In this document: positions 130 through 64,000 of the stretch, in pieces
How positions within the stretch are numbered: the first letter of the stretch is position 1
How the letters are laid out: every line of letters begins with the position of its first letter
Source of the DNA: Ylistrum balloti
Lineage: Eukaryota
Direction of reading: 5' to 3'
DNA: 64,000 nt
Assembly: GCF_031769215.1 (NCBI RefSeq)
Contig: NW_026781965.1
Location: 1,488,001 to 1,552,000, forward strand
Position numbers and translations under genes: made by a program
Notes under the pieces: model-generated
Told to the model about the DNA's origin: nothing
Databases searched by the model: none
The model's input: only the letters and a program-made list of their open reading frames with translations

Positions 130-474
130 CTGAAAACAGCAAATGAAGAGATATTAATACATCAATTAAAGTGAAAACTTAACCCAATTAGATTGAAATT
201 TGAAGACTATATTTTTGTAAGCAAGAAACAAAATACTAATAAAGTTTTGTGCACTGGCTGTTGATTTTCTTTGTCAAATAGTGATTTTTGTATAACAAAA
301 ACAACATGGGTTTTGTAATGGTAAATAATATTACAATAATATTGGTGCTGATTTTTATTTACCAAGATTAGTTTTGAGTGCAGACTCATAATTGAAAACA
401 AATTGCGGTCTGATACGATGGTTATGGTATGTAACTACAATGTCATTCAATAACTTTTTACAAAATATATTTAC

Positions 475-547
475 TTCCAATCTCTGTTCTGTCTTCGATG
501 CCTTGTTTCAGTTTGGCGATATACACAAAACGATGAATCAAATTTTT
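475..547 (-). CDS. TEX47: TEX47-like internal exon
   Basis: ttttcattttcag acceptor, KNLIHRFVYIAKLKQGIEDRTEIG, donor GTAAAT phase 1 (73 bp). Confidence 0.85.
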
Positions 548-673
548 CTGAAAATGAAAAACAGAAAATGCATTTCAATTGTTCTCAACAAAACAAGCAC
601 AAAATGTCAAACACAATACACACACAATGACTAGTTTCTGACGCTATAGTCATTTCCTAAGGGCGACAATTAC

Positions 674-877
674 CAAACCCATGGTGGGAATTTCACATGT
701 AATTTCAAAGTAGTTCCTTTTAGGCCAATCAAATTTGATTCTGTCATCGGCCTTCTTCTTCTTGCCTTTTTTGGTGATATTTCTCTTATCTGGCTTAGGT
801 GAGGATGGTCCTTGTCCATCAGATTGCTCAACCTCTACATCCTCACCTACATCTCCAGCAACACCTTGTTCAGCCAT
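674..877 (-). CDS. TEX47: TEX47-like, candidate alternative first coding exon (1b)
   Basis: 68 codons MAEQGVAG...FDWPKRNYFEITCEIPTMGL, then donor GTAATT in phase 0, 126 bp from the acceptor at 548; PKRNYF resembles the PRSNYL segment before LLHRMF in vertebrate TEX47 as I recall it. Confidence 0.55.
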
Positions 878-3049
878 CAGTTAATACCAATGTATATTAT
901 TCCAATAAAGAGCTGGAACAGATGTTTGTGTGACTGGATTTGGAAGTTAGAAACACAAAAGGAAATGTTTCCAGTGATCCAAAAATAATGATAACAATAT
1001 CTTTCACACCTATCAAACAAACAGCGCCAGTATAATTCCTGTAGTAAATATCACATATCGTAATGAAATACTGTACAGTCAAGTGTACCTAGAACATAAG
1101 AACACAATCACCACATCGCATAGTTTACTATCGTGCATGCGTATAATGTCCCCACAAGGCGTATTAAAGCAATGTTGATGTCATGGGAACTCTGTATGTA
1201 ATCAGCATGTTACAAAGACTGTTAGATTGTGTCAATAGAAACCTTGGACCAACTTCCCCTCCCTCCACATACACAGTATACACTGGAAGGCAAATGTTTG
1301 ATTTAGATATATTCAACAAAAGACTAACTCCAACAATGGAAAAGAACAGTTGCTTTCATACACTTGCTCAACTAAAAGCACGATGATCTATCAATAATTT
1401 GTACGGCTTTACAACCTGATTGCTGTTTGGCAGTTTAACTGTGGGAGCTGTTGACACAGACTGAGATATCAATGAATATGCAGTGTTATCAGTGACTGTA
1501 TTGACCCTCACAACACATAGTAGAATGGTCCATGGTTCACTTCCAATGGAGAAAGCCAGCAACAATGATATAGTGTTCAAACACATCCATATCAGAAATT
1601 ATATGTACATAGCAACATTGGGCAAAAGAAAATTAGACGGCTTATCAACAAGAAACTGATTTTAGAACTATATACTACCCAGTTTCCTGCAAAGTCTACG
1701 GGGTGTAATGATGAAGGGAAGAATATTATGCGCAAAAACATATGGTTGTGATGGAAAAGAGACAATTTCACTTCTGGAACTTGGAGGTGGATAGTGATGA
1801 AGGGTTCATTGAAGATGTACAACTAATGTGACCTTATAATGGTAAGACTCTGCATAATGGACCAAATCTTTGTTTCCATTAGAAATAAAACTGAAGTTCA
1901 TGCACATTTTCAACACTGAGATAAATCACTATTCTCAAATGGACATAAATTTATGTCTTGTTTTAAACCATGCCATGTATACTAATCGTTCAAAAAAACG
2001 TTAGCATTAGAAAACTCATGTGAAGTCTGGTATTCAGGATAGTAGATACTAATACAATCCAGCATTCATTCGTTGGAATTATTTTTCAAATACCTAATGT
2101 AAATCCTGAAGTTTAAAAAAAAAAGTGAACTGCTATAAACCTAAAGGTTTACCTAGGTTTTCATTTTTTTTTTTTTTTTTTTTGACATTAACAAAACCTA
2201 ATATTTGAGATTCTATACAAACTTAAGTAAGGACAAAATCATACTTCAGCTTTATCACAGATTTTGTAAGCAACACATTATTTTTAGGTTTGGAATGGAA
2301 ATGGAATATCGCTATCTGAGCTTTTGGGCAAATCATATATTCGCATATTTGTCACTGTTATTGTCTTCTTGTGAAGCATTTGAAATTTTCAATCAATGAT
2401 AAAAACAAATACTGTTGATAAAATACATTGTGGTTAATTTTGTTCCTTTCTACTGTATAATAATCTTGGTACTTAGAAATTTATCTGATTTCTCTAATCT
2501 TTGGTTATTTTAGCAAGGATCTACTTTACACATCACAACAGGTAAATGATACCCAATTCAAGAAACAGATTTCTTTTCCACATATGGAACCATCTACAGA
2601 ACGGATGATCATTTAATGACAGCTTAAATAACAAGTACAATGGTTGGACAAAGAAATGTGTAGTATAATTCTAGGCTATGTTAGATTGCGAGATCTGAAA
2701 GGATCAAGAAGAATGAAAGTCCACTGTACAAAAACAAAAAAGATTAATGGTACCAGCAAATGTAGATAATGGAATCTTGTAATCAAGATACGATTTTTAA
2801 CGATGAAAAGACATTAAATTACTATATTGCTTAGAAGAGTGTAATTGTGCTACAGCAATATTTAATTTTTGAGGAACAAGACTTCACTAAACTGCAGACA
2901 AACACAAGTCCCACCTTTTTTCTACTTAAACTTGAATAAATTTTATATCATTTAAATTTCAGATTCAATCCAACAAAATAATTTTTTACTCTTTATTTGA
3001 TTTGTGTCCAAACCAGTGTCAAATTCTATGTCTTATAGATCTTATTTTA

Positions 3050-3400
3050 TAGAAGGCTGTTATTATAGGACTGTATCGTCACATCTTATAGAAGGCTGTT
3101 ATTATAGGACTGTATCGTCACATCTTATAGAAGGCTGTTATTATAGGGCTGTATCGTCACATCTTATAGAAGGTTGTCATTATAGGACTTTATTGTCACA
3201 TCTTATAGAAGGTTGTCATTATAGGACTGTGTCGTCACATCTTATAGAAGGTTGTCATTATAGGACTGTGTCGTCACATTTTATAGAAGGTTGTCATTAT
3301 AGGACTGTATCGTCACATCTTATAGAAGGCTGTTATTATAGGACTGTATTGCACATCTTATAGAAGGTTGTTATCATAGGACTGTTTCGTCATATCTTAT
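3050..3400. repeat. 39-bp minisatellite, subfamily A (about 9 units)
   Basis: Unit TAGAAGGCTGTTATTATAGGACTGTATCGTCACATCTTA. Confidence 0.95.
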
Positions 3401-3412
3401 GGAAGTAGTAAG

Positions 3413-4665
3413 TAGTAAGTGGTTATTATGAGACTGCAACATCACATCTGATAGTGAGTGGTTGTTATGAGACTGTAACATCACATCTGGTAGTAAGTGG
3501 TTATTATGAGACTGTAACATCACATTTGGTAGTAAGTGGTTATTATGAGACTGTAACATCACATTTGGTAGTAAGTGGTTATTATGAGACTGTTACATCA
3601 CATCTAATAGTAAGTGGTTATTATGAGACTGTAACATCACATCTGATAGTAAGTGGTTATTATGAGACTGTAACATCACATCTGATAGTGAGTGGTTATG
3701 ATGGATCTTTAACATCACATCTGGTAGTAAGTGGTTATTATGAGACTGTAACATCACATCTGATAGTAAGTGGTTATTATGAGACTGTAACATCACATCT
3801 GATAGTAAGTGGTTATTATGAGACTGTAACATCACATCTGGTAGTAAGTGGTTATTATGAGAGTAATGTTTCATCTGATAAGACTGTTACATCACATCTG
3901 ATAGTAAGTGGTTATTATGAGACTGTAACATCACATCTGGTAGTAAGTGGTTATTATGAGACTGTAACATCACATCTGATAGTAAGTGGTTATTATGAGA
4001 CTGTAACATCACATCTGGTAGTAAGTGGTTATTATGAGACTGTAACATCACATCTGATAGTAAGTGGTTATTATGAGACTGTAACATCACATCTGATAGT
4101 AAGTGGTTATTATGAGACTGTAACATCACATCTGGTAGTAAGTGGTTATTATGAGACTGTAACATCACATCTGGTAGTAAGTGGTTATTATGAGACTGTA
4201 ACATCACATTTGGTAGTAAGTGGTTATTATGAGACTGTAACATCACATCTAATAGTAAGTGGTTATTATGAGACTGTTACATCACATCTAATAGTAAGTG
4301 GTTATTATGAGACTGTAACATCACATCTAATAGTAAGTGGTTATTATGAGACTGTAACATCACATCTAATAGTAAGTGGTTATTATGAGACTGTAACATC
4401 ACATCTAATAGTAAGTGGTTATTATGAGACTGTAACATCACATCTAATAGTAAGTGGTTATTATGAGACTGTTACATCACATCTAATAGTAAGTGGTTAT
4501 TATGAGACTGTAACATCACATCTGGTAGTAAGTGGTTATTATGAGACTGTAACATCACATCTGATAGTGAGTGGTTATGATGGATCTTTAACATCATATC
4601 TGATAGTACGTAGTTATGATGGATCTGTAACATTATATCTTATAGTAAGGGATTATTATAGAACT
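3413..4665. repeat. 39-bp minisatellite, subfamily B (about 32 units)
   Basis: Unit TAGTAAGTGGTTATTATGAGACTGTAACATCACATCTGA; 30/39 identical to subfamily A. Confidence 0.95.
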
Positions 4666-6307: not shown

Positions 6308-7891
6308 CTGAACAAAATAAGTTAAGGATCATAAACTTGAAACAGTGCAGTTTTACATACAAGTAATAATATGATTATATTTTAAATTTTAATGACAGAA
6401 CATTCATTTTAGTCTTTAATTACACAAAACAAATTCATTTGTGGTAATTGCTACCAAGAGCAGATAACCCTGAGTAACAGCACCCTTGAAATCAAAGTGT
6501 AAGAGGAAGTAGAGCAAGTTAATCATGTAGACAAGGAAAACTCATCAAACTGCAATTGGCAGTTTAATAGGCAGTATGACCTCCGTTGACATCAATAACT
6601 GCCCTGCAACGTCTGCACATGCTCCTTATTAGTCGTCGGTGGCTGATCTGTGGGATGCGCTGCCATTCCTCTTGCAGAGCAATCATAAGCTGTTGGCGGT
6701 TCTGTGGCGGATTAGGTCGAGCTGAAACCCGGCGTTGCAAGGTGTCCCAAGCATGCTCGATAGGGTTCAGATCAGGAGAACGACTTGGCCAGTCCATGCG
6801 AACGATTGCTTCACGTTGAAGATAGTCGTTGACCACACGAGCACGGTGAGGACGAGCATTATCATCCATCAGAATAAAATCATGGCCAACAACTCCTGCA
6901 ATGGGCCTTACTATAGGGTGTAGAATCTCGTCCCTGTATCGAACAGCTGTTAAAGATCCATTGTCTATGATGTAGAGGTCTGTATGGAAGTCAACACTGA
7001 TCCCTGCCCAAACCATCACTGACCCACCACCAAAGCGATCATGCTGGACAACACAGCAGTCTGCATAGCGCTCTCCTTGGGTTCTCCATACCCTCCTCCT
7101 ACCGTCATGGAAGTCAACACAAAACCTAGACTCATCTGTGAACATAACATTTCTCCAATGACGTAATTGCCAATTCAAATGATGAGTGGCCCATTGATGT
7201 CTGGATTGTCGATGACCTCTGGATAAAATTGGTCGGACTGCTGGTCTTCTAGCTCGTAAATTAGAGGCATGGAGTCTGTTTCTGATTGTCTGAGATGAAA
7301 TCCTTAGATTTGTAGCACGCTGAAACTGAAGATTCAAGACAGGAGCACTCAAAAACCGCTGACGTCGTGCCGTGATGCAAATGAATCTGTCCTGTCGGGC
7401 TGTCGTACAGCGTGGTCGTCCAGATCTGGGGCGTTGACGGACGTTATTTGTCTGTTGATAGCGATTCCATAGCCTACTAATCACGCTCTGAGAAACATGA
7501 AGCTGTGCCGCCACATTTCGTTGAGTTTGACCAGCTTGAAGGAGCCCTATAGCTCGCGCGGCTTCCATATCATTTAAATGTCTTCGCATGATTAGTTTTT
7601 CAAGTTTTCGTTACAAATTGATTAAATGTTTCCAAATTCAACTTTTTTTAGCTTAGAAGTAACAGAATCAAAACCTGCAAGATTCCTCTGTAGTAATAGA
7701 CCAGTCAGTTTTTCACACCACCATAGTTAACTAGAGCGGAACGGCAAGACCTTCAGATGCACGTGCTTTCACCTTTGACATGACTTTAGGTACATATTGG
7801 AGAAACTACGAGTGCAATTACCGGCAATACATGATTTGAATTTTTAAAGATATTATGGTCACAATTTATGATCCTTAACTAATTTGTCCAG
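6308..7891 (-). mobile_element. full-length Tc1-family DNA transposon
   Basis: Imperfect TIRs of about 27 bp, CTGAACAAAATAAGTTAAGGATCATAAA (6308) and the reverse complement of TTTATGATCCTTAACTAATTTGTCCAG (ends 7891), flanked by TA; encloses an intact transposase. Confidence 0.93.
6564..7589 (-). CDS. Tc1/mariner transposase, DD34E, 341 aa
   Basis: Paired-like HTH N-terminus, GRPR linker, FTDESRF, GGGSVMVWAGI, MDDNARPH, WPSRSPDLNPIEHAW; 34 residues between the second D and E by count. Confidence 0.97.
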   Translation of the reverse strand: MRRHLNDMEAARAIGLLQAGQTQRNVAAQLHVSQSVISRLWNRYQQTNNVRQRPRSGRPRCTTARQDRFICITARRQRFLSAPVLNLQFQRATNLRISSQTIRNRLHASNLRARRPAVRPILSRGHRQSRHQWATHHLNWQLRHWRNVMFTDESRFCVDFHDGRRRVWRTQGERYADCCVVQHDRFGGGSVMVWAGISVDFHTDLYIIDNGSLTAVRYRDEILHPIVRPIAGVVGHDFILMDDNARPHRARVVNDYLQREAIVRMDWPSRSPDLNPIEHAWDTLQRRVSARPNPPQNRQQLMIALQEEWQRIPQISHRRLIRSMCRRCRAVIDVNGGHTAY

Positions 7892-9450: not shown

Positions 9451-10607
9451 AACGTTGAAGTTCAAGTCAGTAGTTTAGTTTGAAGTATCTCTTCGGAATA
9501 ACTTCCGTTTCATTTTCCTTACAGGCAACATAATCTTCCCGTCAAGCTGTATACGAAATAGCAGTGCAAAAGACGGTTTGTATCAGTCACAGACACTATG
9601 TTTAACAGTTTTTGAAATCAATGTCAATGACATCCATAGCTATCCAAACAGACCAGTTTGATAATCAAAGGAGCTAAAGTAATTAATATGGTTAGCTGTT
9701 TAATTTATTGTCACAGATCCTGTCAGATGATCACAATATCCGATAACATGTGACGTATGGTATGCGTTCGCCGACTACACAACAAAACCCTTGTCGGTTG
9801 TTCAATATTCAAGAGGTCTATATTTAATTCGTAGGTTGTACATAGCATGGAAAACAATCTATAGAAGAATTTATACTACAGTAAAGACAAAATTGTACAA
9901 ATGATACAGTTACACTTGCCATGTTTTTATTGTTGGAGGTAAAAAAGTAGATAACAGTGTATATACATTTAATGTCTGTGTATGTCAAAATTTTTTTATA
10001 TTAACATCAGTTGGGGACATCAATGTAAAGTTACATACATAGTGTATGTCTAGGAATTAAACACACAGCTTGTTTGTTATTCTACATTCAAAAGTAATAG
10101 TAAGGCATCTTTTTATTGGATAATTTTCATGATCGAATCCCTGATATTCTCCTTAGTTCAGATGCAAGCCCAAAGATGGCAACCATCTTTGTGGCTGAGG
10201 TAGATGATCAACATTGACATATTGTAGAAATTTATTTTAATACTAGGCTAAAATGTGTCATTGCAGTGTAAAGTGGAGAGTACGATGATGATAAAATTTG
10301 TCTTGTTGTGAATTGCCAGCTTTTGAAAAGCTTCATTAGCCTGACTAGTATTGTTATTTCATGATCAACATATGATTTATGATGGTTGTGAACTGACTGA
10401 AGACACGCTTTGCAAAAATCTATGAGGAACTAACTATGAATCAAGTGGCTCTGGTCTATAATTTGATATTGATCATGTGCATTCTGAGATTCTTAGGCCC
10501 TTGAATGTTACTTTAATTCACTGTTATATACTTGAATATTTTATACCTAATGCAATTGTAATAATCTATTGTTTTTGGTTTTCAGGGATGAGTTGATCCT
10601 GACACTG

Positions 10608-11696
10608 ATGAATGACGAAATGAAAGCAGAATTCTCAAACTTGGTGAAGTTTGTGAAGTCATCCAGTAATAGCCTAGACTTGAAGTCATCTGAGGAACAG
10701 ATCACCAAGTCTAAAAGTGAACAGTTTTTGTCTGGCAATGATGCAGTACAGATTTATAAGGATATTATATCAAGTCATTCAAGTAAATCAAAAGGCATTC
10801 AGAACAGCAGCATTGGTAAGGATCACACACCAGTAGAACAGGTACAATTAAAGCATCAGAATAGAGGACATCAATTTTCCAAACATCCTGGTAGGCCATC
10901 TACCCAATGCTGTTTAAATGTACAAACATTACTGACATGTTCCCAGAATGGAGACCTAGCAAAAGTCAAGGAATGTTTGACCAATGATGTAGACATTGAT
11001 AGTCAGGATCAATTTGGATGGACAGCTCTCATGTGTGCAGCATGTAGTGGACAGAGTTTAGTAGTAAAACATCTTCTGGCCAATGGTGCTAATAAACACC
11101 TTACTGCAACAGGCGAAAAAACAGCCGCTTCGATTGCCTCTGATGCAGGTCACTGTGATGTAATGAGATTTATATCAGAATTTGATCCAAATAAACCTGA
11201 AGTGATTGAAGAAAGAACACAGTCATCTCCCAGGGGTATACAGGTGGCACAGCCATTTTACTGTGATGTTTGTAAACAGGACATAAAAGAGACTTCACAA
11301 ATAAATCATCAAGCATCAACTGTACATTTGTTTAACATGAAAATGAAGGCAAGCCCACATAGTTTTTTAGAACATTCTAAAAACAAAGGGTATCAAATTA
11401 TGAGACGAACTGGGTGGGATGGTGAGAAAGGTTTGGGGTCAGAAGGTCAAGGGCTGAAATTCCCAATAAAGACAGTGTTAAGAAAAGACAGAGCTTGCTT
11501 AGGATCTGACACATCTAAAGAAAAAGCAAAGATTACACATTTTGGTCCTAGAGACATCAGTGCTGTGAAGAGGAATGTCAGTGTTAGTGAAAGAAAAATG
11601 TCTGCTAGAACTTTAAGCAAAAGAGCACGGAAAGCAAAGGAGAGGAAGGAAAAACAATGGGAAAAGAACTTAAGACAACAGTTTAATTTGAATTAA
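10608..11696 (+). CDS. GPANK1: G-patch domain and ankyrin repeat-containing protein 1 (single coding exon)
   Basis: Ankyrin repeats (DQFGWTALMCAACSGQSLVVKHLLANGA), C2H2 (YCDVC...HQASTVH), G-patch (NKGYQIMRRTGWDGEKGLGSEGQG); acceptor ttttcag ends 10585, first ATG at 10608. Confidence 0.92.
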   Translation: MNDEMKAEFSNLVKFVKSSSNSLDLKSSEEQITKSKSEQFLSGNDAVQIYKDIISSHSSKSKGIQNSSIGKDHTPVEQVQLKHQNRGHQFSKHPGRPSTQCCLNVQTLLTCSQNGDLAKVKECLTNDVDIDSQDQFGWTALMCAACSGQSLVVKHLLANGANKHLTATGEKTAASIASDAGHCDVMRFISEFDPNKPEVIEERTQSSPRGIQVAQPFYCDVCKQDIKETSQINHQASTVHLFNMKMKASPHSFLEHSKNKGYQIMRRTGWDGEKGLGSEGQGLKFPIKTVLRKDRACLGSDTSKEKAKITHFGPRDISAVKRNVSVSERKMSARTLSKRARKAKERKEKQWEKNLRQQFNLN

Positions 11697-17092: not shown

Positions 17093-18553
17093 CAACTATG
17101 GAATAGTGAACAGACCAAACTACATATATATGTGGAACCAATGAACATCATAAGACATTGGTAATTCATTTAAATTCAGTAAACAGAGGGGATATTTGTG
17201 TCTATGTATTCTTTGCGTATCTATCTTGAAACCATGAAAAATGCAATTTCGCCAGAATTTATTTAAACATAGCCTCCTTTTCTTTTTTAGCACGTGTTTA
17301 AGAAACTTCAATAGTTTATGTATGCAAAAATGTGTGGATTTACATAGGCGACATACTTATAACAAACAGATTTGCCTCCCTTGTTCATCAAATATTGAAT
17401 TCCAAGAGTAATAACAACCTGCATAACCTGCTTTACTGCTGTGTTGTTATCACCTTACAGTAAATAATGTTACAGAAATTCTTATTTCAGAGTTCAAATT
17501 TACACTTGGATACGTCAAACAAGTACTCTGGAAATGGTTTCTTGTGCCATATTTATTACCTCCTATAATTCAAAACAAACTAACTATATGTGTAGAGAAA
17601 ATCCATCCAAATGACAATGGACAATCCATCACATACAAATCTAACGATAAAAACATGAGGACAAACAGCATTTATTTTTCATAAAACCATTTCGTTTAAA
17701 GAGTCTAATCAGCTGTCAAAGCATTAAAACGACTTTAAATAGAAATTTAAATACCATTTCACAATAGGTCAAGATGTTTCTCGGTGTGTCACTCAATAGT
17801 AATAGTTGTCTTATGAAACAGATACGCTACTCTTTAATAGACATGTACCATGTTCAAAAATTCATTTTGTCTCCAGGAAATGGCTATGAGATACACTAGC
17901 ATTACACGTAGTTTGAAAGTCAATGTTATCTCTTGTTAGTAGCTGTAACCTAACTTTACCAGTTGATTGGTTATTCCTAGACAACCCTGTGGTTGCAACA
18001 TATATATGATACATCCACATTCTATACCATATACATGTGTATGTACTCTTTGTTATTAAAGAGGCGGATGCATATGATACTTAATAGTTTTAAAGATTTT
18101 CATTTATCATCAACTGTCAAGCAAATTCATTTTGAAAAGAATGATACAAAACCCAATTATCTTTATCAAAGCTATATATTCAAGTACAACTTCGTCATGA
18201 CATATATACATGCACAATGCATATACAGCTCAAATCACTTGCTTTCCGTTTAGTCCGGATGAAAATAGCTATATTTCTAAAACTAGCAACAATTCTTTGT
18301 GATTCACAGACTCAATATTCATTAATAAGCACACTTTGTAATAAGAATATAGAAATGTAATAAAAAGTTTATTAATTTTAGTTGATGTTTATGATCAATT
18401 CGGTTATTGACTTATAATCTGCACAAAGGTAAATAACACATAATTATTTCACACAAAGTCTGCAGTCTTTTCATCTACACTAAGATTACAATTACAGAAA
18501 TGGCTTTGATTTGTCATGTATACATAGTATATGTGATGTATGACAAAGTGATA

Positions 18554-19183
18554 TCAATATCCACTGTTGATCAGGTTGACAATAGTTGAATTCATAGGTG
18601 CATAATTTCTTGCGTTCCCAGATGACAATTTTCCAGATTCGTAGATCTGCCATTTTCCGTCATTATCTCGCGACAATGAACACATAATGACCGCCTGAGA
18701 AGAACTTGCGTGTGTAAAGGTTGTTTTACACAGATCAACTGTAGGGTTATCAGCCTGGTAAAACTTTAAACTCGGATTCGGATATCTGGAAATGTTCGGA
18801 GAACACCAAGCACTTAGTGTGAAGTACATTTTTGTAACATTACTAGGTATTTTTTTCAGATGGACATTGATGGTGTGATGGCCGATCCTTTTCACAGCAT
18901 CCATGACATCACCAGAGTGCCATAATCCTGTCAAAGGGAAATGTTGATGTTCAGATTGATATCCACGAAAATCGCATATTGCCATATTTGTTGTTCCATT
19001 ATACACCAAGCAGGATGCGTCTAGGTAATCACGACCGGATATAGGATATCCCCAGTGTAGATCGAAGACCACGTGATCAAAAGCCTCTGGGATAGAATAG
19101 AGCAGCACCATCAGGTAGACAGTGGTGTTGGGTGGTACATTGAAGTCTGACAGGGTCGCTAATTTTCCATTGCTTAATCTGTT
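18554..19183 (-). CDS. last exon of Ubl-TerD gene: end of ubiquitin-like domain plus TerD-like domain
   Basis: cttatttccag acceptor, phase 0; ATLSDFNVPPNTTVYLMVLLY (Ubl C-terminal strands), then FDLHWG, DYLDASCLVY, HSGD, INVHLKKIPSNVTKMYFTLS, AVIMCSLSR...WQI, the ordered TerD motifs. Confidence 0.75.
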   Translation of the reverse strand, partial: NRLSNGKLATLSDFNVPPNTTVYLMVLLYSIPEAFDHVVFDLHWGYPISGRDYLDASCLVYNGTTNMAICDFRGYQSEHQHFPLTGLWHSGDVMDAVKRIGHHTINVHLKKIPSNVTKMYFTLSAWCSPNISRYPNPSLKFYQADNPTVDLCKTTFTHASSSQAVIMCSLSRDNDGKWQIYESGKLSSGNARNYAPMNSTIVNLINSGY

Positions 19184-19769
19184 CTGGAAATAAGAATCAG
19201 ATATATATATTCTCGACGGAGGGATCGTAATGATGAACCTATGATTCATTTGTGCTTCTATATTGAACTGAGACTTACAAAGGGCGATCTTTATCAAAGT
19301 TACAATAATGGATTTATTGTGGAATGTAAATTAAACATAAAAATAATAATATGCTTATATCTGCTTCAGATATAACCTGAAAACATGGTTTATAATACAC
19401 GTAACGATAAATGAAAATTGAAAACAAATGATCCATTTGCAATACAATTTGTATTGAGTAATATCAGATAGACATGAAAAATTAAAGATTTATAACATCA
19501 GAAAAGCAAATTCTTCAACTTGAAAAAAGGTGTTTAGACATTTAAGAAACTCTTCGCTCATTAATTAAGAAAATACTCAAAAATGCAGGAAAATAACTAG
19601 ACTGTATGTCCATATTCATGGAACAAAATATTCAAGTAATACACGAAAAACACGGCGACTGGAAAATGTACAAGAAGAGTAAGTAATGTAACATTCTTCT
19701 CAAATGAGGACAAGGTAAACAGCTACGGAACCATCAGGCTAACTAACAAGTATCAAACATGCCTGACTT

Positions 19770-19960
19770 TATCACACATAAGGAAATATACTATTTCCCA
19801 GTGATATCACTATGGCGACCATAAAACTATTTGATCTGAACATCTGTCTATATTTGTATAAGGTACTTGCCATACTAGTTAGATTTTTCTCAGAATCAAA
19901 GTCGTGCTGGAAAGCTAAGTAACTGATCATAATATACACCAATACAAGGAATGGCTCGAA
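19770..19960 (-). mobile_element. Penelope-like RT C-terminal relic in intron
   Basis: Broken frames give IGVYYDQLLSF and FYGRHSDI, like PLE YGVYISQLIRY and KFYGRH; shares tggcgaccataaaact with 33145. Confidence 0.55.
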
Positions 19961-20015
19961 CGAGACCTTAGCTTTGACAAACACTTTAAAGTATTGATCA
20001 ACAGCTAATACATAC

Positions 20016-20333
20016 TGTTAATTCATTGTTGTTGTGATTAAGTTTTTGCTTGTCGACATCGTGATTCAGTCGGTGTTTTATTTCGTCTTTTAGCTTTAAA
20101 ACTGTCATGGTGGAGTAGTAGGGAATGGAAATGGATTCACCCGTGAGGACAGTCACGTGAACGAGGTCCCATCCCTGTTTTGCCACCGATGGCGTGTATG
20201 TACTCTCATACACGGTGAACATAGCACCCAATGAAGCCTCCATCATTTTCACACTGTGACTGTCTGGGTTCACAGATTCTTCACAACCAGGATAGGGACA
20301 CATCTTCTCCTTTTTAACACACTGGATCACGCA
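20016..20333 (-). CDS. internal exon of Ubl-TerD gene: C-terminal half of RING-like Zn finger plus ubiquitin-like domain
   Basis: tttttgtttcag acceptor and GTATGT donor, 106 codons phase 0-0; CVIQC...CPYPGC, then VHVTVLTGESISI...TVLKLKDEIKHRLNHDVDKQKL (Ubl beta-grasp pattern). Confidence 0.75.
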
Positions 20334-23300
20334 CTGAAACAAAAATGGAATTTTGGATTACACGCCAACACATATCTGCTGGATATGGGTGCCATTTACG
20401 AAACTCTTCACTGCCCCCTAACAAACTGAGTATTAAATACAGCACAACGCCTCAGTACACGACAAAGGAATTTAAAGGAATGCACTTTTTTGGGCAGGAT
20501 AAACATAAATGAATGGCCTGCACTCCTGGCCAGTGACATCATATCGTAGGCTGAAATGAATACTGATGCTATACATAAAAAAACAGACACAGAGTTTTAC
20601 AGAACATGTGACATTTCTGTTGTCTCTGAGAATTGTTCTCAAGTAAGTCAGTTAATCTGAAAATAGTAAATAAATGTGAAGGAGGAAACACGACCAGTAA
20701 GTCCAGTTGTTTAAAAAATGCTGCTTTGAAAGCATTATTTTAAGGTGGTTGATCGCTTCATTATTCCCGAGATAACTCTGAACTATGGATCGCATTTTAG
20801 AAGGCGGCACACAGTACATATTAATCGCGTGTTTGAAATTCAGAAAGATTGGTCCCCAATGCACACCTATTTGCTGACATTACAACAATTGGTCAAGCAT
20901 TTGAATTTTGCTTAAATTCTTCTAAAATCTGAATCATTTACAAAAATTGTTTAGATGTTTGTAATCCATAAATAAAAAAACCATTTAAGTAAAGGCCTGA
21001 TAATAATACAGCTTATTCACGGTAACACCATCCCACTAATGTAATATTGCACAGGCGTTTTTGAAAAAAGTGGTACATATTGATAACATATTCACAAGAC
21101 CTAACCCCCATTCACCTTTGCTTACTTCCTTTGTTGAAAACAAAATATCTTGAAGGAAAACGGATGTGTCCAGAAATAATCCAGTGTCTCGCCAGTGTTA
21201 TAAAGGGAGACTACCTCGTTGCGTTAATGTCAAGGTCTGCCAAGGGGATACTTTGCAAGGCTTAATGGGAAAAACCAACAAATCGATTTGAGATTTTAAT
21301 GACAGGATTTATTAAAAAAAAAAACAACTTCAGTTAACACCTCCTTGACATCGTTCCACGACATGTACATTTGAAGTCTTACAGAAATCAATACGATAAT
21401 TTAGGCAGATCAAGTTTTATAAATGGAGAAGGAAGTTTGAATGACTTATTTCGTTTATCATTGTCTTCAATACGAAAATGTTCTGTTTTTAAAAATGAAA
21501 TGTCTTTAATCAACTATTTCATGTTGACACAATTAATATCTTTACTTAGCATTTGAAGTTTTAGTCGGTTTACATTGAGCAGTGAACGTAGACTGGTTCT
21601 CCTGAAGAAGACCGGTTTGCTTAAAAACATTAACTGCTACCCCATCTTACTACATGTAATTTCAATCATTCACAACAAGAGAGTCTATCCCAATTTATTC
21701 ACCCTCGCCAAAATACAGCTTATAGTTTAAGACACTGACCATGTATTTTCCATGTACGTCCTCGGTTAATCAATGTGATACACTTGGCTTTGGTCTCTTA
21801 AATCAGCAGTCTCACCAACTATCATTGTGATTCCTTCATGTGCTCTGTGCATTAGAAAAGCATCTAAGATAAAATCTTACCTCCATGCATATCAAAGATG
21901 GATGGTCACAGTTGTCTGTAACATCATAGGATGGAAACTCTCTTGACAATTTATCATTGGAACAATGCCGGCACAACATGATCAGATGTCATATGCCTGT
22001 CAAAGTAATTGTGATAAATAATGAGTGGATTGTTTGTATAAATGATATTAGCGTGCATGTTTTTTTCATCACATCTTATCATACGACAGAGATGATATCT
22101 AAAAGTGTCTTCAGTAATAACAAATATATTTCATACGTGTGTCATATGCTAAAATATTTTAATATCTTTCACGAGTGCACAGGACGAGTGAAATATACAA
22201 AACATATTAAACACATGAGTGAAATATATTTGTTATTACTGAAGACACTATCAGATATTCTATTTAATACATTTTCAGTATAAAATCACGAAGCTGACTA
22301 TGCTTTTTGCGGACACTACTCACTCATCATAACTTCGCAGTATGAAAATTGAAATGAAAGTTAACCATAGAAATGAATGTCGTGTTACTATTTCGGTCAA
22401 CAACCCTTTCAGGTTTCTAGTTTTTCAGGGTTTTCTTGTACATTGCTTTATGATTTGTTAGTTTTTTTTTAAAGATGATTTCTCTTTTCATTTGTATAAG
22501 TCAGCAACAGTATTATTTTTCACTAGTATATTTTTATAATAACACTTTTTAATGTGATACTTCTCTATATTTCACTAGCAAAAATTTGATAAATACTAAT
22601 AATCCGCACCTTAAAAGTCCATGAGAGATGAAGAAATGGCTATAGAATGTATCAGAGTACATGTATAAGCAATTAATCAACAATAACATAAAGGTTACAG
22701 AATCATTTTTCTATCAAAACCTATCAATACACAAGTGGTATGTTTTAAATCATACTTTGATACAGAATTTCAGCACCGGCTCGATTGAGGTCAGCCGCCC
22801 TCGAACACAAACTTGTTATGTATGTTTTATCAATAAGGTGTATCATAAGAGACACTTACATGTAAAGAGCTCACTCAGATTACATTTGTATTGTATATTA
22901 CATTATGTTACAATATACTCAATAAGTGACTCATTTGGTCTATGCTCTTGTAAGTGAAATAGGGTGTCGTATATACAAGTGTCATCCGTTTATGCTTTTG
23001 ATTGAGATTGAGTGTCGTGTTCTAATTAAAATAAAAGTTAACTTAAATGGTTGTAATAATTCATTTAATCAACTATATGTATACCTTATATGTAATATAC
23101 TGTTGATATATTTAATGTGTTACGTATTGATGGACCCATAGACTCTATATATAATGTATATGAAAACCCTCGCCAAAATGCAAATTACATTTAATATTCT
23201 AAGACACTGACCATGTATTCTCTATTTAATGTACAATAGTGCTTTTGGTGCCTCATAAGTCGATTAACTTTGGCTGGACATTGATTTAATTTTTAATGTT

Positions 23301-38339: not shown

Positions 38340-38983
38340 CCATGGTTCCTTATAAAACTTTGCGTTCAGTTGATTTTATTCGACTGTAAAGGATGTTGGG
38401 GTCAATTTCAAAGGTAACACCATTAGTAACGGGTATGGCCACCGTTTGCGAAGTAAACAGCATTGCAGCATCGTCGCATGAAACTTGTAAACCGGTGGAT
38501 AATTAGAGGAGAGATGTTGTTCCATTCAGCGATCAAGGCTTGGGCCAGCTCCTGCAAGTTTGACGGCTGATTTTGACGTTCTCTCAGGCGTCGCCCAAGA
38601 ACGTCCCAGACATGCTCCATCAGTGACAAATCAGGTGATTTAGATGGCCAATCTAACACCTGTACGTTATTCTGCTGCAAGAAAATTCTGCTGACGCGAT
38701 TGGTGTGCGCTGGTGCGTCATCCTGTTGAAAAATGGCGCCAACGCCATGGCGTCTTAAGAATGGCAGAACCACTGGTCTTAAAATTTCGTCCCGATATCG
38801 AATGCCGCTTAAATTGCCATTTAACACAACAAGCCTGGCAGGAGTCCCCCCACAAATGCCACCCCAAACCATTACACTTCCGCCGCCAAAGCGGTCCCGT
38901 TCTGCGACGCAGCAGCGGCGAGACTCCCCAGCCTGGATCATGCCTACAGCCCTTTCTCTCTGTACTTCTGACGGCTGGGGCAT
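38340..38983 (-). mobile_element. internally deleted Tc1 element (186-aa fused ORF, 38423-38983)
   Basis: MPQPSEVQRERAVGMIQAGESRR fused to CCVAERDRFGGGSVMVWGGI...QDDAPAH...SPDLSLMEHVW; one TIR-like end, cttataaaactttgcgttcag, near 38349-38369. Confidence 0.88.
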
Positions 38984-39285
38984 AATGATAACATTGATAG
39001 ATAGCAAGATTCGGTGATTTCTAAGTCCTAAGGATCTAAGGAACAGTTGTCAGTTTGAATCTTTATGAAATTCAAGCGAAGATACAAGTTAGTCGCAGAA
39101 AACCTCGTGCAGCTCTTTCGCTAATACAGACTTTCACGCTTGAATGATTTTGGTAACCCCCTTGGATTTTGTAATGTAAAACATTACCATTTTCTAATAT
39201 CGCACAAACGTCATTTTGTTTTCACTCATTTACAGGTATTTGCCAAGGAAACATGTTAACCTTTCTTTTTTTGTTGAGTATATAG

Positions 39286-44696: not shown

Positions 44697-46438
44697 GATC
44701 TTTTGTTTTCAGTATTCATCCCTGAAACAAAAACAGATGCGGTGGTTGATGTATTTATGGAAACCACCAGTGAAGGCTTACGCAATGTCCAACTTCATCG
44801 ATTCCCAAAGTCCTATATTTGGCGTGCAGACGTTAATGTTCCAATTCATCGACAAGAATTATTATTTCGTTTCAAAATCAAAAGACAGAGAGAAAGGGTG
44901 ACTGGAATCCTCATATCTACAGTTAATATAGAATGTGTAACAGATGAAACAATTTATTTTCGAAGAAATGCAAACGATTTGAGAAGACGCCAGGATATTT
45001 TGCTATGTGATGATATTTACTGGAAACAGCGGGGGTATGCCGAAATAAGTGCATCAATAATTTTGTCGGTAGGGGAAATCTCTCTAAAACAAGCTATCAT
45101 TGACCTTGAAAACTATCAAGAACAGATGTTTGTTCATTTTCAATACCTGGATTTCAAACACATATTAGACATGATGGAAGACCAGTTAGGCCACTTATCT
45201 TTCAAAAGAGAACGTGCATTATGTTTTTTAGTTTTCTTATCTAACATACCAAGAACGTCACATCGGTTCCCAATGCATATGGTTCCAGATATCGTTAATG
45301 CAGTAGATTGTTCTCTATCACATGACCTCACAAGGTCATGTATAGATAAAGTTTCATCTGCTTTATATTTTTTATACTCAGAAGCTCCACATCCGAAAAG
45401 TTTTGTGAGATTTGTGGATATTGCATTTCCGATGTTACCATCGTCCTTGTTGATCAAAGTATACACCTGCAACTGGGACAGAGCGAAATGTCCATTTTCA
45501 GTCGATGATGAAGAATACACTGCTTCGGTATTAAACACTTTCCAGAAGGAATCTTCAGACATAACTGAAAATCAAAAGCTTTTAGAAATCATTTTAACAA
45601 ATATAACATTGAAGTCTCTTGTTCAATGTACAGACTCTCTGCTTACGAAGAATGGGAGAATGAATGATATGGCAAAACTTTTATTTTCCAACCTCCTAAT
45701 TAAAACGAAAGTAGAGATAAGCAAATCCAGTAAAATGGCCACCGACCAATTTCAGAGCTTACTGAATATCTGGTTGCTCACGAGCTCATTCTCTAAAGAT
45801 CCAGAATTCACTGAAGTGGTTTCACTGTTCGAGAGAAGTATTTTAAGTGTGATTAAATCAATGGAAACGAACGATCAGTGTAAAAACTGGGAAGAGCTTT
45901 TAAATATCTGCACAAGTGAGGATGCCGTACTGTTTCAAAATTCCGAAATAAAAGTTACTCTCATGGAAACTATCTGCACCGCGCGAAATTTGAAAATATG
46001 TCCATCATTAGTAAGATTATTGGACACTGACAAATTTTGCCATCTAGACATTGAAGTAGGGAAATCAATATTGGCAACATGGTTTGACAACATTATCTCC
46101 CACCATTGTAAATACCAACACAAGGTAACCTCTCAGGATTTGTGTCGTGTGTATAGACAACTTGGAAACATTTCTCGAACAAAATATCTCCAAGCAAATC
46201 AAACATTGGTGTTACCATTGTCTAAAAAGATATACAACATACTTAGGAAAAGAACAATGAAAGAAAACATTCAGACGACTGCTGACATTGAACAGATGGA
46301 TGATCCTTTCGCTGAGAATCAGTTCGCTGCTCATATGAAGACTTTAATCCACGATGGACATGACACGAGGGGCTACTCCGTCAATGAGTTTATCATGGAC
46401 ATCAGTGGCAGAACAACTCCGATGTTAATAAACTCTAG
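44697..46438 (+). CDS. RNF213: RNF213-like exon (N-arm/stalk region)
   Basis: tttcgtttcag acceptor phase 0, 1742 bp open, donor GTTAGT phase 2 joins AG|A (R) to the next exon. Confidence 0.85.
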
Positions 46439-47661
46439 GTTAGTATAATTCATCAAAGCCTATTATCAACAGAATGTTTGAGCTGATAACCGGTAGGTTC
46501 ACAATGCAGTTAATAATTACAATTTACACTCATTAATTATATATGGAAAGTCAAACCAGCAACTCTCCCTCACTAAGATCAAATTGATCGCTATAGAATG
46601 GTCTAAACCTTCATACTTTAGACTGAACTACTGGCATCTAAGCATCACAAACTGAAATCGATTTCCTTATAGCCCTATGTCAAATAGTTTAACCAAAAAA
46701 TAAATACGTATGAAATTGGCCAGAAATGTTTAAATGATGATTAGTTAATTATAAGGCAACTGTGATTAGTTTTCTTTCTTGTGCTTGATTTTGGTGACAG
46801 TGAAGAAATTGCGTATGTATATCAATGTGTTTCAATGTCACGCAACTCACTGTTTTGTGTCGATGAATGACTAATGATGTTCAAACGCTGCCATTGACCT
46901 GAAATAATGAGATGGTCTTACAAAAATCCCTAAATGACTAATGTCCATCCTGCTTGGTGAGAGTAAGTAACTATTTTATGTAAACAAACCTTGAGCATAC
47001 AACAGTACTTTTAAGGATTTTGCTATATAACATGTCTAAATTCTAAGAAATTCACAGCTCATCATTTAGACAAGAACTATCGAAGTATACGTTTAATGAT
47101 TTACAAAAAGATAATTAATTCCAGCTTCACTATGTTATACTTTTTAAACAAGATTTAATACATAATTCAAACTTGTCTCTTTGAACATATGTAAGATCGC
47201 GTCCATTTTTAAGCAAGATAAATGTTAAGAAAAAGATGTCTTTGTAGTTCTCAATGGATTAAATAAGTTTACAATATCAACAAAGGGAGGACTATTTACG
47301 TAACGACAAACGAAAAAGCACAAGGATAATATATGTCCAGATATTTCACATGGATAAGAGGCTTCATTTTTATCAACAAAACCCGCAATATAAACTTTGG
47401 ATAAAATAAAGGTAATGGTATACCCTCGAAAAGAGTATTAGTTTAGTGACAAGAAAACTTCACAATAGATTTTCTATTAAGAACGTCATTACTAACTATA
47501 TACAAAGCCCTAACAACGTGACACTAACACTCAGATAATCTATGTACTTTAAGCTGTAATACTGTAAGGTATCTTGGTAACTAAGTTTTCTTTTTATAAT
47601 ACATTCACACATCAAAGATAATCCTTTTTATCTCAATGATCTGTCCTTGTTTTTCCCCCAG

Positions 47662-59221: not shown

Positions 59222-59447
59222 GTAAGTGTAAGGAACCATCATTGATCGGTTGATGAGAAATGAAAAGTGTTTCGGTCTAGCATTATTATATACTATGATC
59301 TTTTATAAGTAATATTTGTTAATGTAAGCCCAGATTCTCCTAAACATATACCGACGTAAGATGGAATGTTTATATTTTCCATTTTTATCAAAATCATTAT
59401 CTTTTTTAATTGGCAGTTTTCTCAGAAATGCATTTGCTGTACTTTAG

Positions 59448-59778: not shown

Positions 59779-60699
59779 ATGTATCCATCTGTAACATTTA
59801 AATGCATCTCTTTCACATAGATTGATATCATATCCTCTGTTATATTACTACAGGATCCTGTAGGACCAAACATGGTACTTATGAAGTGGATGGATTGAGT
59901 ATTCATTAAGGGAAAACGAGTATTCCATGTACTGCAAATTGTAATTATTTCCCTTTTGGAACTATAATATTGCACTTGATCATGGTGGCGCTTATTTATG
60001 TTTTATAAAGCTGTGTTCTATAACACATATCATGGGCGTGCCAATTTATCATATATATGGTAAGCTATAATTAGAGATGTTTCTTGCAAGGTCATATTCT
60101 TTGAAGATTATCGTATGTTTTTATGATAATGTTGTATCTATGTTTTGCTTGGTTTGTATATTGTATATTTATTATAAATGTATATACTTTCCTTTGTCAG
60201 AAAGATTATTGTTTTTCTAAGTTTATATGTTTATGTACCTTACTTCGACAATATGATAACCAATTCAGAACAATATTCAGTTTGCGGGAAGCTGTGTTAT
60301 GGAAACAGCGCTTTTCTAAGATATGATAACTTGTGTCTATTTCATTTTGTTGTGTTGAATACCCTACGCTGTATAAGAAATCAGATTTTAATGTGTAGAG
60401 ATTTTGTATATAATACAACCATGAATCTTGATAGATGTGGCCTAATGTTATCTAATTAGGAGAGATTGTCAGACATTCATTTCGGAATCTTTCATGCATT
60501 GTGATTTTTACACAATGAAAATTATGCACATATGGTATCACAAAATTCTGATGTTATTATGGTAGTCATGCTAGTAAATAATATTTTGACTTACTGTAGG
60601 AAATGTTATATTGTATATAGGACAAGTATCGATGTCTCCAATATTATGGCTACATAATAATTTTAAATGATAACATGATTCAAAAGACATTAGATGTAT

Positions 60700-62524: not shown

Positions 62525-62769
62525 CACTTTGTACTTTTTGTGTTTCTAAGGTAACTTGTAGTAAACAATTGTTTACCAACAGCCAGGTCTGAAAGGACAT
62601 GGTTATATATTATATCACGAAGTGATATATGATAAGAGAACATGTACTTTGATCTGTACCCATATTGTGGTATTTGTTGCTCTTGATATTTTTTGCATGT
62701 AAATGCCTTACATAGGAACATTGGGATGCATGTTTATACAAATCCTACTGCTGAAAATTGTAAATATCT

Positions 62770-64000
62770 TACGCATTGTGAATCAATGTTATGTATATAG
62801 ATGAAATATGAGGAATACGTAGCAGCATTGTTACTCAATGTTATGTATATAGACGAAATATGGTGAATACTTAGGATCTTTGTGAATCAATGTTATGTAA
62901 AATATGGTGAATACTTAGGAGCTTTGTTACTCAATGTTATGTATATAGACGAAATATGGTGAATACTTAGGATCTTTGTGAATCAATGTTATGTATATAG
63001 ATGAAATATGATGAATACATAGAAACATTGTGAATCAATGTTGTGTACATAGATGAAATATGATGAATATGTAGGAGCATTGTGAATCAATGTTGTGTAT
63101 ATAGATAAAATATGATGAATATGTAGGAGCATTGTGAATCAATGTTGTGTTTACAGATGAGATATGATGAATACGTAGCAGCATTTTTACGCAATGTTAT
63201 GTATATAGACGAAATATGATGAATTCGTAGGAACATTGTGAATCAATGTTGTGTATATAGATGAAATATGATGAATCCGTAGGAACATTGTGAATCAATG
63301 TTGTGTTTACAGATGAGATATGATGAATACGTAGCAGCATTATGAATCAATGTTATGTATATAGACGAAATATGGTGAATACTTAGGATCTTTGTGAATC
63401 AATGTTATGTAAAATATGGTGAATACTTAGGAGCTTTGTTACTCAATGTTATGTATATAGACGAAATATGGTGAATACTTAGGATCTTTGTGAATCAATG
63501 TTATGTATATAGATGAAATATGATGAATACATAGAAACATTGTGAATCAATGTTGTGTACATAGATGAAATATGATGAATATGTAGGAGCATTGTGAATC
63601 AATGTTGTGTATATAGATAAAATATGATGAATATGTAGGAGCATTGTGAATCAATGTTGTGTTTACAGATGAGATATGATGAATACGTAGCAGCATTTTT
63701 ACGCAATGTTATGTATATAGACGAAATATGATGAATTCGTAGGAACATTGTGAATCAATGTTGTGTATATAGATGAAATATGATGAATCCGTAGGAACAT
63801 TGTGAATCAATGTTGTGTTTACAGATGAGATATGATGAATACGTAGCAGCATTATGAATCAATGTTATGTATATAGACGAAATATGGTGAATACTTAGGA
63901 TCTTTGTAAATCAATGTTATGTATATAGATGAAATATGGTGAATACTTGGAAGCATTGTGAATCAATGTTGTGTATATAGATGAAATATGATGAATACGG
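62770..64000. repeat. 52-bp minisatellite with 512-bp higher-order repeat; runs off window
   Basis: Unit TGTGAATCAATGTTGTGTATATAGATGAAATATGATGAATCCGTAGGAACAT; a 44-bp variant recurs at 62891 and 63403. Confidence 0.95.

What the first reader, a model, noticed from the sequence alone, without database searches (positions are those of the whole stretch)
18554..20333. Spliced animal gene fusing a RING-like finger, a ubiquitin-like domain and a bacterial-type TerD domain
Seen: two phase-0 exons join in frame (ELT|NRLSNGKLATLSD) and give Zn-finger half, Ubl and TerD-like fold, with an intron splitting the Ubl. Established: TerD domains are the core of bacterial Ter stress and anti-phage clusters and of Dictyostelium cAMP-binding proteins; they are not a familiar vertebrate domain. 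Inference: a ubiquitin-system effector or sensor that couples a TerD ligand-binding module to an E3/Ubl module in invertebrate stress or immunity. I know of no characterised protein with this architecture.
Basis: partly seen in the sequence, partly recalled or inferred. Interest (0 to 1): 0.8.

Follow-up and report, generated by a model that had tools for sequence, protein, structure and literature searches.

The report
Conserved RING–ubiquitin-like–TerD gene in scallop
This is a real, intact three-exon scallop gene for a 348-residue protein that joins a RING zinc finger, a built-in ubiquitin-like domain and a TerD-type sensor domain; the family is old, occurs patchily across eukaryotes and has never been studied, probably because the usual model animals appear to lack it.

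Summary
On the minus strand, exons 20333-20016 and 19183-18557 join in phase 0 exactly as described. The product is the 348-aa NCBI model "uncharacterized protein LOC132543898 [Ylistrum balloti]".

Family-level profiles and an AlphaFold model confirm three domains:
- a C3HC4 RING with all eight zinc ligands invariant
- a ubiquitin fold (TM about 0.9) with no free C-terminal GG
- a TerD beta-sandwich (3ibz E 3.7e-7; TM 0.65-0.75)

The TerD is not "bacterial-type". It belongs to a large eukaryotic clade that lacks the acidic Ca2+ motif and keeps its own invariant Asp/His set.

The same architecture occurs in cnidarians, echinoderms, molluscs, a brachiopod, amphioxus, lamprey, Glomeromycotina fungi and a jakobid. 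Both scallop introns sit at identical positions and phase in amphioxus, sea star, oyster and Rhizophagus, so the whole gene is old and not a recent bacterial import.

Spliced transcripts across both junctions exist in an oyster. No RNA data were available for this scallop.

Function is inferred only: a ligand- or metal-responsive RING ligase or adaptor. An immunity role has no support. The scan noted this gene once more, on this same window (s1-238094).

The parts
21881..21979 (-). Coding exon 1 (aa 1-33). It holds the start ATG and the first half of the RING: C3, C6, C24, H26, C31.
   Evidence: Sequence and GTAAGA donor. Splice mapping to P0001 gives a phase-0 intron after aa 33. The product is identical to the NCBI model.
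20334..21880 (-). Intron 1 (1547 nt, phase 0). It lies between RING ligands C31-x2 and C34.
   Evidence: The position and phase are the same in amphioxus, sea star and Rhizophagus clarus and in oyster.
20016..20333 (-). Coding exon 2 (aa 34-139). It holds the second half of the RING (C34, C45, C50 at 20333-20283), a helix, a disordered linker (aa 74-86), and the first two thirds of the Ubl (aa 88-139, 20171-20016).
19184..20015 (-). Intron 2 (832 nt, GTATGT...TTCCAG, phase 0). It splits the Ubl after ELT.
   Evidence: The homologous intron is present in amphioxus, sea star, Rhizophagus and oyster. In run X1 it carries a high-copy repeat at about 19674-19941.
18554..19183 (-). Coding exon 3 (aa 140-348 plus stop). 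It holds the last third of the Ubl (19183-19097) and the whole TerD domain (19096-18557).
18557..19096 (-). TerD-like beta-sandwich (aa 169-348). Clade signature residues: W183, P186, D191, D194, C197, D210, H228-S-G-D231, D234, G240-H-H242, S263, W317, G328, Y333.
   Evidence: Family profile against PDB: 3ibz 3.7e-7, 2kxt 3.2e-5. Foldseek: 9a6r_B 2.3e-8, 3ibz TMt 0.71, 2qng 0.75, 2kxt 0.69. Conservation table.
18368..18373 (-). Candidate AATAAA polyadenylation signal, 181 nt downstream of the stop codon.
   Evidence: Read from the sequence. This is weak evidence in an AT-rich genome and no RNA data were available.

Best explanation
The locus is an intact, single-copy, three-exon gene of the scallop Ylistrum balloti. 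It encodes a 348-aa cytosolic-type protein.

Domain layout:
- An N-terminal C3HC4 RING finger (aa 1-50, followed by a helix).
- A short disordered linker.
- A non-conjugatable ubiquitin-like domain (aa 88-168).
- A C-terminal TerD beta-sandwich (aa 169-348), joined to the Ubl with almost no linker.

It belongs to an ancient, patchily retained eukaryotic family.

Most likely mechanism (inferred, not shown): the Ubl-TerD pair is a sensing or docking module. The TerD pocket is lined by the clade-invariant Asp/His residues D191, D194, D210, H228, D231, D234 and H242. These replace the bacterial acidic Ca2+ loop. The pocket would bind a metal ion or small ligand, or a partner protein. The RING would couple that event to ubiquitin transfer or to assembly of a ubiquitin-system complex. 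The Ubl would act in cis as a regulator or as a handle for ubiquitin receptors, as in Parkin or HOIL-1L.

Shown: gene structure, the three folds, conservation, distribution, shared introns, and transcription of the oyster orthologue.
Inferred: E3 activity, ligand binding, and any physiological role.
For: - Gene model: identical to NCBI P0001, with canonical splice sites.
- RING: eight zinc ligands invariant in 34 and in 12 widely spread members. The N-terminal profile's top PDB hits are nearly all RINGs (RNF4 0.024, Tfb3/MAT1 0.16 over positions 3-66, BMI1). Structural neighbours are almost all RING or U-box domains, many of them RBR RING1.
- Ubl: profile against ubiquitin about 2e-9. Model against ubiquitin TMt about 0.9, rmsd 1.4.
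- TerD.
- Repeated, independent fusion of this TerD clade to ubiquitin-system parts: E2 + F-box + TerD in Protostelium; SDR + Ubl + TerD in Funneliformis; VWA + RING + Ubl + TerD in Potamilus; RING-Ubl-TerD in the jakobid Andalucia.
- Age: two phase-0 introns at identical positions in scallop, amphioxus, sea star, oyster and Rhizophagus.
- Expression of an orthologue: the oyster protein P0007 is encoded with introns in the genome and without them on 1.3-1.5 kb contigs from SRA runs. The same holds for P0019 on about 2 kb contigs from four runs.
- Single copy in this genome.
Against: - No RNA data exist for this species. The only run found is genomic DNA.
- This protein's own Pfam scores are below the curated cut-offs.
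- Residues that usually contact the E2 are not conserved: the hydrophobic residue before C2, the aromatic residue in the RING helix, and the Arg after the last Cys.
- RING structural matches are weak (Z <= 4.4; Foldseek E > 0.3).
- The canonical TerD Ca2+ motif is absent, so the ligand is unknown.
- There is no experimental literature on any member.
Confidence: 0.6

Rival explanations
1. Non-catalytic scaffold. The RING is a protein-protein interaction module, as in MAT1/Tfb3 or IRF2BP2. The protein would be an adaptor that tethers a TerD-bound partner or membrane site to ubiquitin receptors through its Ubl, with no ligase activity of its own.
For: E2-contact and linchpin positions are variable across the family. 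The only profile match that spans the whole finger is Tfb3/MAT1. The top VIA match is the IRF2BP2 RING. The loop KLSxEFP between C6 and C24 is more conserved than the canonical E2 surface.
Against: Many active RINGs lack these consensus residues. Close structural neighbours also include active RING1 domains of ARIH1, ARIH2, HOIL-1 and RNF144. Relatives fuse the same TerD clade to an E2 and an F-box, which points to active ubiquitylation.
Confidence: 0.25
2. Dedicated innate-immunity or stress sensor. TerD would detect an infection- or metal-derived signal and trigger ubiquitin-dependent defence, possibly together with the nearby RNF213-like giant.
For: Bacterial ter clusters are linked to phage and chemical stress (established knowledge; PMC7159879 lists TerD among ligand-binding domains of conflict systems). 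A giant ORF that an earlier scan note calls RNF213-like lies about 25 kb away on the other strand (notes s1-238049 and s1-238094). Some bivalves carry 2-4 paralogues.
Against: The gene is single-copy here. It is slow-evolving, with 40-48% identity across phyla and 37% to a fungus. Its presence in Glomeromycotina and a jakobid argues for a conserved cellular function rather than an arms-race gene. No expression or induction data were found. Gene adjacency in an animal genome is weak evidence, and synteny was not tested.
Confidence: 0.12
3. Artefact: bacterial contamination, a recent bacterial transfer, or a dead pseudogene that was mis-modelled.
For: TerD is mainly a bacterial family. This protein's Pfam scores are sub-threshold.
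Against: The gene has two spliceosomal introns with conserved positions in five species of five phyla. It is flanked by eukaryotic genes and transposons. The ORF is intact and keeps every family-invariant residue. Bacterial TerD structures score only 26-33 bits against the family profile, while eukaryotic members score above 120 bits.
Confidence: 0.02

Closest known systems
Bacterial TerD/TerE/TerZ proteins (Pfam PF02342; Klebsiella TerD 2KXT, Streptomyces 3IBZ/2QZ7, Bacillus SCP2)
   Same: Same beta-sandwich fold over nearly the whole domain (TMt 0.65-0.75). Sequence homology is detectable with a family profile (E 3.7e-7). The DxLDAS and H-S/T-G-D motifs are shared.
   Different: The 13-residue acidic Ca2+ motif GDN(R/L)TG(E/A)GDG(D/E)DE is replaced by GD-x8-G-H-H. 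There is no ter operon context. The domain is fused to a RING and a Ubl. The gene is eukaryotic and contains introns.
Ubl-containing RING-type ligases Parkin and HOIL-1L (RBR family)
   Same: An integral, non-conjugated Ubl sits in the same chain as a RING whose nearest structural neighbours include RBR RING1 domains of HOIL-1L, ARIH1/2 and RNF144.
   Different: There is no IBR, no RING2 and no catalytic cysteine domain. The domain order is RING then Ubl, not Ubl first. TerD takes the place of the catalytic module.
MAT1/Tfb3 RING (TFIIH) and other non-ligase RINGs
   Same: The profile alignment spans the whole finger, including the C-P-x3-C last pair.
   Different: The match is weak (E 0.16). 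The rest of the protein is unrelated.
Other eukaryotic TerD proteins: Dictyostelium CABP1 (capA/B) and Trypanosoma brucei FAZ28/FAZ30
   Same: These are eukaryotic proteins carrying Pfam TerD domains (PMC3188802; PMC10953051).
   Different: They have no RING or Ubl. Their relationship to the clade described here was not tested.

Membership tests
RING finger (C3HC4 cross-brace) | Eight zinc ligands in the order C-C-C-H-C-C-C-C with RING-like spacing | tested here: met
   C3, C6, C24, H26, C31, C34, C45 and C50 are invariant in A1 (34 sequences) and A4 (12 sequences from 6 phyla plus fungi). The spacing is C-x2-C-x17-C-x-H-x4-C-x2-C-x10-C-x4-C. Cnidarians, sea star and fungi have C-x2-C at the end.
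RING finger (C3HC4 cross-brace) | RING fold | tested here: inconclusive
   The domain model has pLDDT 82. Foldseek gave no hit at E<0.001, but the best superpositions are ARIH1 RING1 (TMq 0.56, rmsd 2.8). The VIA top rows are nearly all RING or U-box, but Z is at most 4.4.
RING E3 ligase (functional class) | Conserved E2-binding surface and linchpin; E2-dependent ubiquitin transfer | tested here: not met
   The residue before C6, helix position C34+4 and the residue after C50 all vary across the family. Activity itself cannot be tested here.
RBR ligases | RING1-IBR-RING2 with a catalytic cysteine | tested here: not met
   After the RING come a helix, a disordered linker, the Ubl and TerD. No further Cys/His-rich domains are present.
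Ubiquitin-like beta-grasp (PF00240) | Profile match and beta-grasp fold | tested here: met
   This protein scores 22 bits (cut-off 25.4). Orthologues score 35-40 bits. The family profile hits ubiquitin at about 2e-9. The model matches ubiquitin at TMt 0.85-0.92, rmsd 1.1-2.
Conjugatable ubiquitin-like modifiers | Exposed C-terminal Gly-Gly | tested here: not met
   The last Ubl strand (VYLMVLLYSIPE) runs straight into TerD. No GG is present.
TerD (PF02342) | Profile match over the full domain and the TerD beta-sandwich fold | tested here: met
   This protein scores 21-22.7 bits (cut-off 25.3) over profile positions 22-174 of 187. Orthologues score 33-41 bits. A2 profile: 3ibz 3.7e-7, 2kxt 3.2e-5. 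Foldseek's top seven hits include six TerD-family chains.
Ca2+-binding TerD (Klebsiella TerD type) | Motif GDN(R/L)TG(E/A)GDG(D/E)DE | tested here: not met
   Aligned to 3ibz GDNITGEGEGDDE and 2kxt GDNRTGEGDGDDE, the family reads GDvlddvkrkGHH. Only G-D is kept. The motif definition is from memory of Pan et al. 2011 and was not re-read.

The most novel reading that the evidence does not exclude
RING-Ubl-TerD is a ligand-gated ubiquitin ligase that predates the animal-fungal split and may be as old as the last eukaryotic common ancestor. Its TerD pocket has been remodelled from an acidic Ca2+ site to an Asp/His site. That pocket would sense a metal or nucleotide-like signal and release Ubl-mediated autoinhibition of the RING. 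The family has escaped study because ecdysozoans, jawed vertebrates and dikaryan fungi appear to lack it.
Probability: 0.25. Interest if true: 0.75.

Novelty: new variant of a known kind. Interest (0 to 1): 0.55.

Why it matters
TerD is one of the least understood widespread bacterial stress and defence domains. Its ligand and mode of action are still debated.

This eukaryotic clade is hard-wired to the ubiquitin system in several independent architectures: RING-Ubl, E2 + F-box, and VWA-RING-Ubl. That gives a concrete output, ubiquitylation, against which TerD's input could be assayed.

The family is conserved from cnidarians to lamprey, in arbuscular mycorrhizal fungi and in a jakobid, with shared introns. 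It is therefore a well-defined "orphan" gene family. It could be tested in Nematostella, oysters, sea stars or amphioxus.

Tried and rejected
- RNA evidence: the look-up of sequencing runs returned one run, X1. Laying it showed genomic contigs that cover the introns at about 95-97% identity, so it gives no transcript evidence for this species.
- Searching the scallop genome with Pfam TerD found nothing. This is consistent with this protein's sub-threshold Pfam TerD score. The protein query found one copy only.
- Anantharaman, Iyer and Aravind 2012 (PMC4104200) may already list this architecture. It is not held in the library, so prior description could not be checked.
- Paper searches that combined TerD with ubiquitin/RING, eukaryotes or animal names found no study of the family.
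- A TerD-domain tree placed Glomeromycotina as one clade (SH-aLRT 99) but left the animals unresolved. It contained no bacterial rows, so it cannot decide between vertical descent and eukaryote-to-eukaryote transfer.
- Foldseek on the isolated RING was not significant.
- Bacterial contamination or a recent bacterial transfer was considered and rejected because of the shared introns.

Full report
**1. What is in the sequence**

- On the minus strand, the reading frame that enters at 20333 follows a polypyrimidine tract and CAG. It leaves at 20016 before GTATGT.
- The frame resumes at 19183 after TTCCAG and runs to a stop codon at 18556-18554.
- A third, upstream exon was missed. It runs from ATG at 21979 to 21881 and is followed by GTAAGA. 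It encodes MLCRHCSNDKLSREFPSYDVTDNCDHPSLICME.
- A splice-mapping script placed phase-0 introns of 1547 nt (after aa 33) and 832 nt (after aa 139).
- The 348-aa product is letter for letter the NCBI model "uncharacterized protein LOC132543898 [Ylistrum balloti]", P0001. The window therefore comes from a saucer scallop.
- A protein search of the whole assembly found this copy only.
- An AATAAA lies 181 nt past the stop codon.

**2. The three domains**

RING:
- Pfam does not call a RING on this protein.
- In 34 full-length relatives (A1), and again in 12 members spanning six animal phyla and fungi (A4), C3, C6, C24, H26, C31, C34, C45 and C50 are invariant. This is a C3HC4 pattern.
- A profile of residues 1-75 finds almost only RING fingers at the top of the PDB list: RNF4 at E 0.024, Tfb3/MAT1 at 0.16 across the whole finger, then BMI1 and PCGF5.
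- A separate AF2 model of this part (pLDDT 82) superposes best on ARIH1 RING1 (TMq 0.56, rmsd 2.8).
- In an exhaustive alignment it matches IRF2BP2, HOIL-1L, RNF144, ARIH2 and HHARI RINGs, but only at Z 3.5-4.4.
- I accept the fold as a RING. It resembles RBR RING1, but no IBR or RING2 follows it.
- The positions that usually touch the E2 are not conserved. Ligase activity is therefore an inference.

Ubl:
- This protein scores 22 bits against Pfam ubiquitin (cut-off 25.4). Lingula, amphioxus and abalone orthologues score 35-40 bits.
- The family profile hits single ubiquitins at about 2e-9.
- The model superposes on ubiquitin at TMt 0.85-0.92 and rmsd 1.1-2 Å.
- The domain has no C-terminal GG. 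Its last strand runs into TerD within about eight residues, so it is a built-in Ubl and not a modifier.

TerD:
- This protein scores 21-22.7 bits against Pfam TerD (cut-off 25.3) over profile positions 22-174 of 187. Orthologues score 33-41 bits.
- A TerD-only family profile (A2) hits the Streptomyces TerD-like structure 3ibz at 3.7e-7 and Klebsiella TerD 2kxt at 3.2e-5, over almost the full domain.
- The full-length AF2 model (pLDDT 85.6, pTM 0.66) has TerD-family chains as its best PDB matches: 9a6r_B SCP2 at 2.3e-8, 3ibz, 2qng, 2qz7 and 2kxt, with TMt 0.65-0.75.
- In those alignments the bacterial Ca2+ loop GDN(I/R)TGEG(E/D)GDDE faces GD-vlddvkrk-GHH. Only G-D survives.

**3. The TerD belongs to a eukaryotic clade**

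- An exhaustive profile search of 1.84 billion cluster representatives gave 1301 hits at E<=1e-3, 660 at <=1e-10 and 149 at <=1e-30.
- Every one of the best 150 whose source name was looked up is eukaryotic.
- Scanning the best 150 with HMMs built here gave 41 RING-Ubl-TerD, about 36 Ubl-TerD, and 50 TerD-only. Many of the TerD-only hits are probably last-exon fragments, because this exon is an open frame by itself. About 20 are large multi-TerD proteins.
- Source names place RING-Ubl-TerD in these groups:
  - Cnidaria: Nematostella, Exaiptasia, Acropora, Stylophora, Porites, Dendronephthya and others.
  - Echinodermata: Patiria, Asterias, Amphiura, Anneissia.
  - Mollusca, Lingula and Branchiostoma.
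  - The lamprey Petromyzon.
  - Glomeromycotina fungi: Rhizophagus, Gigaspora, Glomus, Funneliformis, Diversispora, Dentiscutata, Entrophospora.
  - The jakobid Andalucia godoyi, by inspection of P0184.
- A search seeded with the lamprey protein found no other vertebrate. Its nearest relatives are invertebrate proteins at 42-47% identity.
- No arthropod, nematode or jawed-vertebrate name appeared in any list. This is not proof of absence.
- Other architectures of the same TerD clade:
  - E2 (UQ_con) + F-box + TerD in Protostelium.
  - SDR + Ubl + TerD in Funneliformis.
  - VWA + RING + Ubl + TerD in the mussel Potamilus. This one may be a fused gene model.
  - LIM/EF-hand/ankyrin + TerD in dinoflagellates.
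- Across Ubl-linked and unlinked members alike, the same polar set is kept: D191, D194, D210, H228, G230-D231, D234, G240 and H/Q242, along with W183, W317, G328 and Y333. I read this as a conserved binding site that differs from the bacterial calcium site. That reading is an inference.

**4. Age of the gene**

- The intron after aa 33 lies between RING ligands C31-x2 and C34. The intron in the Ubl lies after EL[T/K/Q].
- Both sit at homologous positions and in phase 0 in scallop, amphioxus, the sea star Patiria, the oyster Crassostrea angulata and the fungus Rhizophagus clarus.
- Amphioxus and Rhizophagus each have one extra intron.
- The three-domain gene therefore existed, with these introns, before these lineages separated, or it moved between eukaryotes as genomic DNA.
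- It is not a recent bacterial acquisition or contamination.
- A TerD tree grouped the fungi together (SH-aLRT 99). It did not resolve the animals and had no bacterial outgroup.

**5. Expression**

- The only public run holding this stretch is genomic. Its contigs cover both introns, so the scallop junctions lack direct transcript support.
- In the oyster, the identical protein P0007 is encoded over 2.7 kb with the two introns in the genome assembly. It is also encoded without interruption on 1.3-1.5 kb contigs from independent SRA runs.
- P0019 likewise sits uninterrupted on about 2 kb contigs from four runs.
- The homologous junctions are therefore spliced and expressed in another bivalve.

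**6. How it probably works**

Shown: a RING, an integral Ubl and a remodelled TerD in one conserved chain, and recurrent fusion of this TerD clade to ubiquitin-system domains.

Inferred:
- The Ubl-TerD unit is the constant core.
- TerD binds a metal, small ligand or partner through its Asp/His site.
- The RING converts that into ubiquitin transfer or complex assembly.
- The Ubl regulates in cis or docks to ubiquitin receptors. The L8/I44/V70-equivalent patch is mostly hydrophobic in the family, although the I44 equivalent is Asn in this scallop.

I put about 0.6 on this ligase-or-adaptor reading overall. I put about 0.25 on a purely non-catalytic scaffold. I put about 0.1 on a dedicated immune sensor. 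That last reading has no positive evidence here beyond the bacterial analogy and a giant ORF about 25 kb away that an earlier scan note calls RNF213-like (notes s1-238049, s1-238094). I did not test synteny for that neighbour.

**7. Novelty**

- The gene is already in NCBI as an uncharacterised model.
- Automatic resources already label clusters "TerD/Ubiquitin family domain-containing protein".
- No paper in the searchable library deals with the family.
- The one survey likely to have listed the architecture, Anantharaman et al. 2012, could not be read.
- I class it as a new variant of a known kind: a RING/Ubl protein with an unusual, remodelled TerD module.
- Interest is moderate. The fold assignments are not surprising once seen. 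The deep conservation, the introns shared with Glomeromycotina, and the apparent absence from standard model organisms make it a good target for study.

Noticed in passing
window 47636-59245 (+), also 44703-46448 (+): A single 3869-aa open frame, with a 581-aa open frame upstream that has no Pfam hit. Scan note s1-238049 calls it an RNF213-like giant. It lies about 25 kb from the TerD gene on the opposite strand. Conservation of this adjacency in other species was not checked.
   Followed up: no
window 6564-7589 (-) and 38423-39007 (-): A Tc1/mariner-type transposase ORF (HTH_Tnp_Tc3_2 + DDE_3) and a second DDE_3 fragment.
   Followed up: partly
window 10569-11696 (+): A 375-aa open frame with ankyrin repeats and a G-patch domain.
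   Followed up: partly
window 19674-19941, 21684-21817, 22086-22200: In the genomic run X1 these stretches have summed contig depth of about 360-3760, against about 5-15 elsewhere, with many loose ends. They are high-copy repeats inside intron 2, inside intron 1, and just upstream of the start codon.
   Followed up: no
P0001 aa ~213-224 (window ~18930-18965): A loop insertion in the TerD domain (QSEHQHFPLTG). It is shared with Mizuhopecten but is shorter or absent in Pecten, Argopecten and other phyla, and the model confidence is low there.
   Followed up: partly
PDB 7jtk_A (Foldseek hit): A 749-residue chain of the Chlamydomonas radial spoke matches the TerD part of the model at E 1.8e-6 over 199 columns. 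With T. brucei FAZ28/FAZ30, this hints at TerD-like domains in flagellar structures.
   Followed up: no
P0184 (Andalucia godoyi), P0257 (Protostelium nocturnum): A jakobid has the full RING-Ubl-TerD layout with an acidic insert in the RING. An amoebozoan fuses an E2 domain and an F-box to the same TerD clade.
   Followed up: partly
window 60001-64000: GC falls to 0.26-0.28 and GC skew rises to +0.15 to +0.36 at the right end of the window.
   Followed up: no
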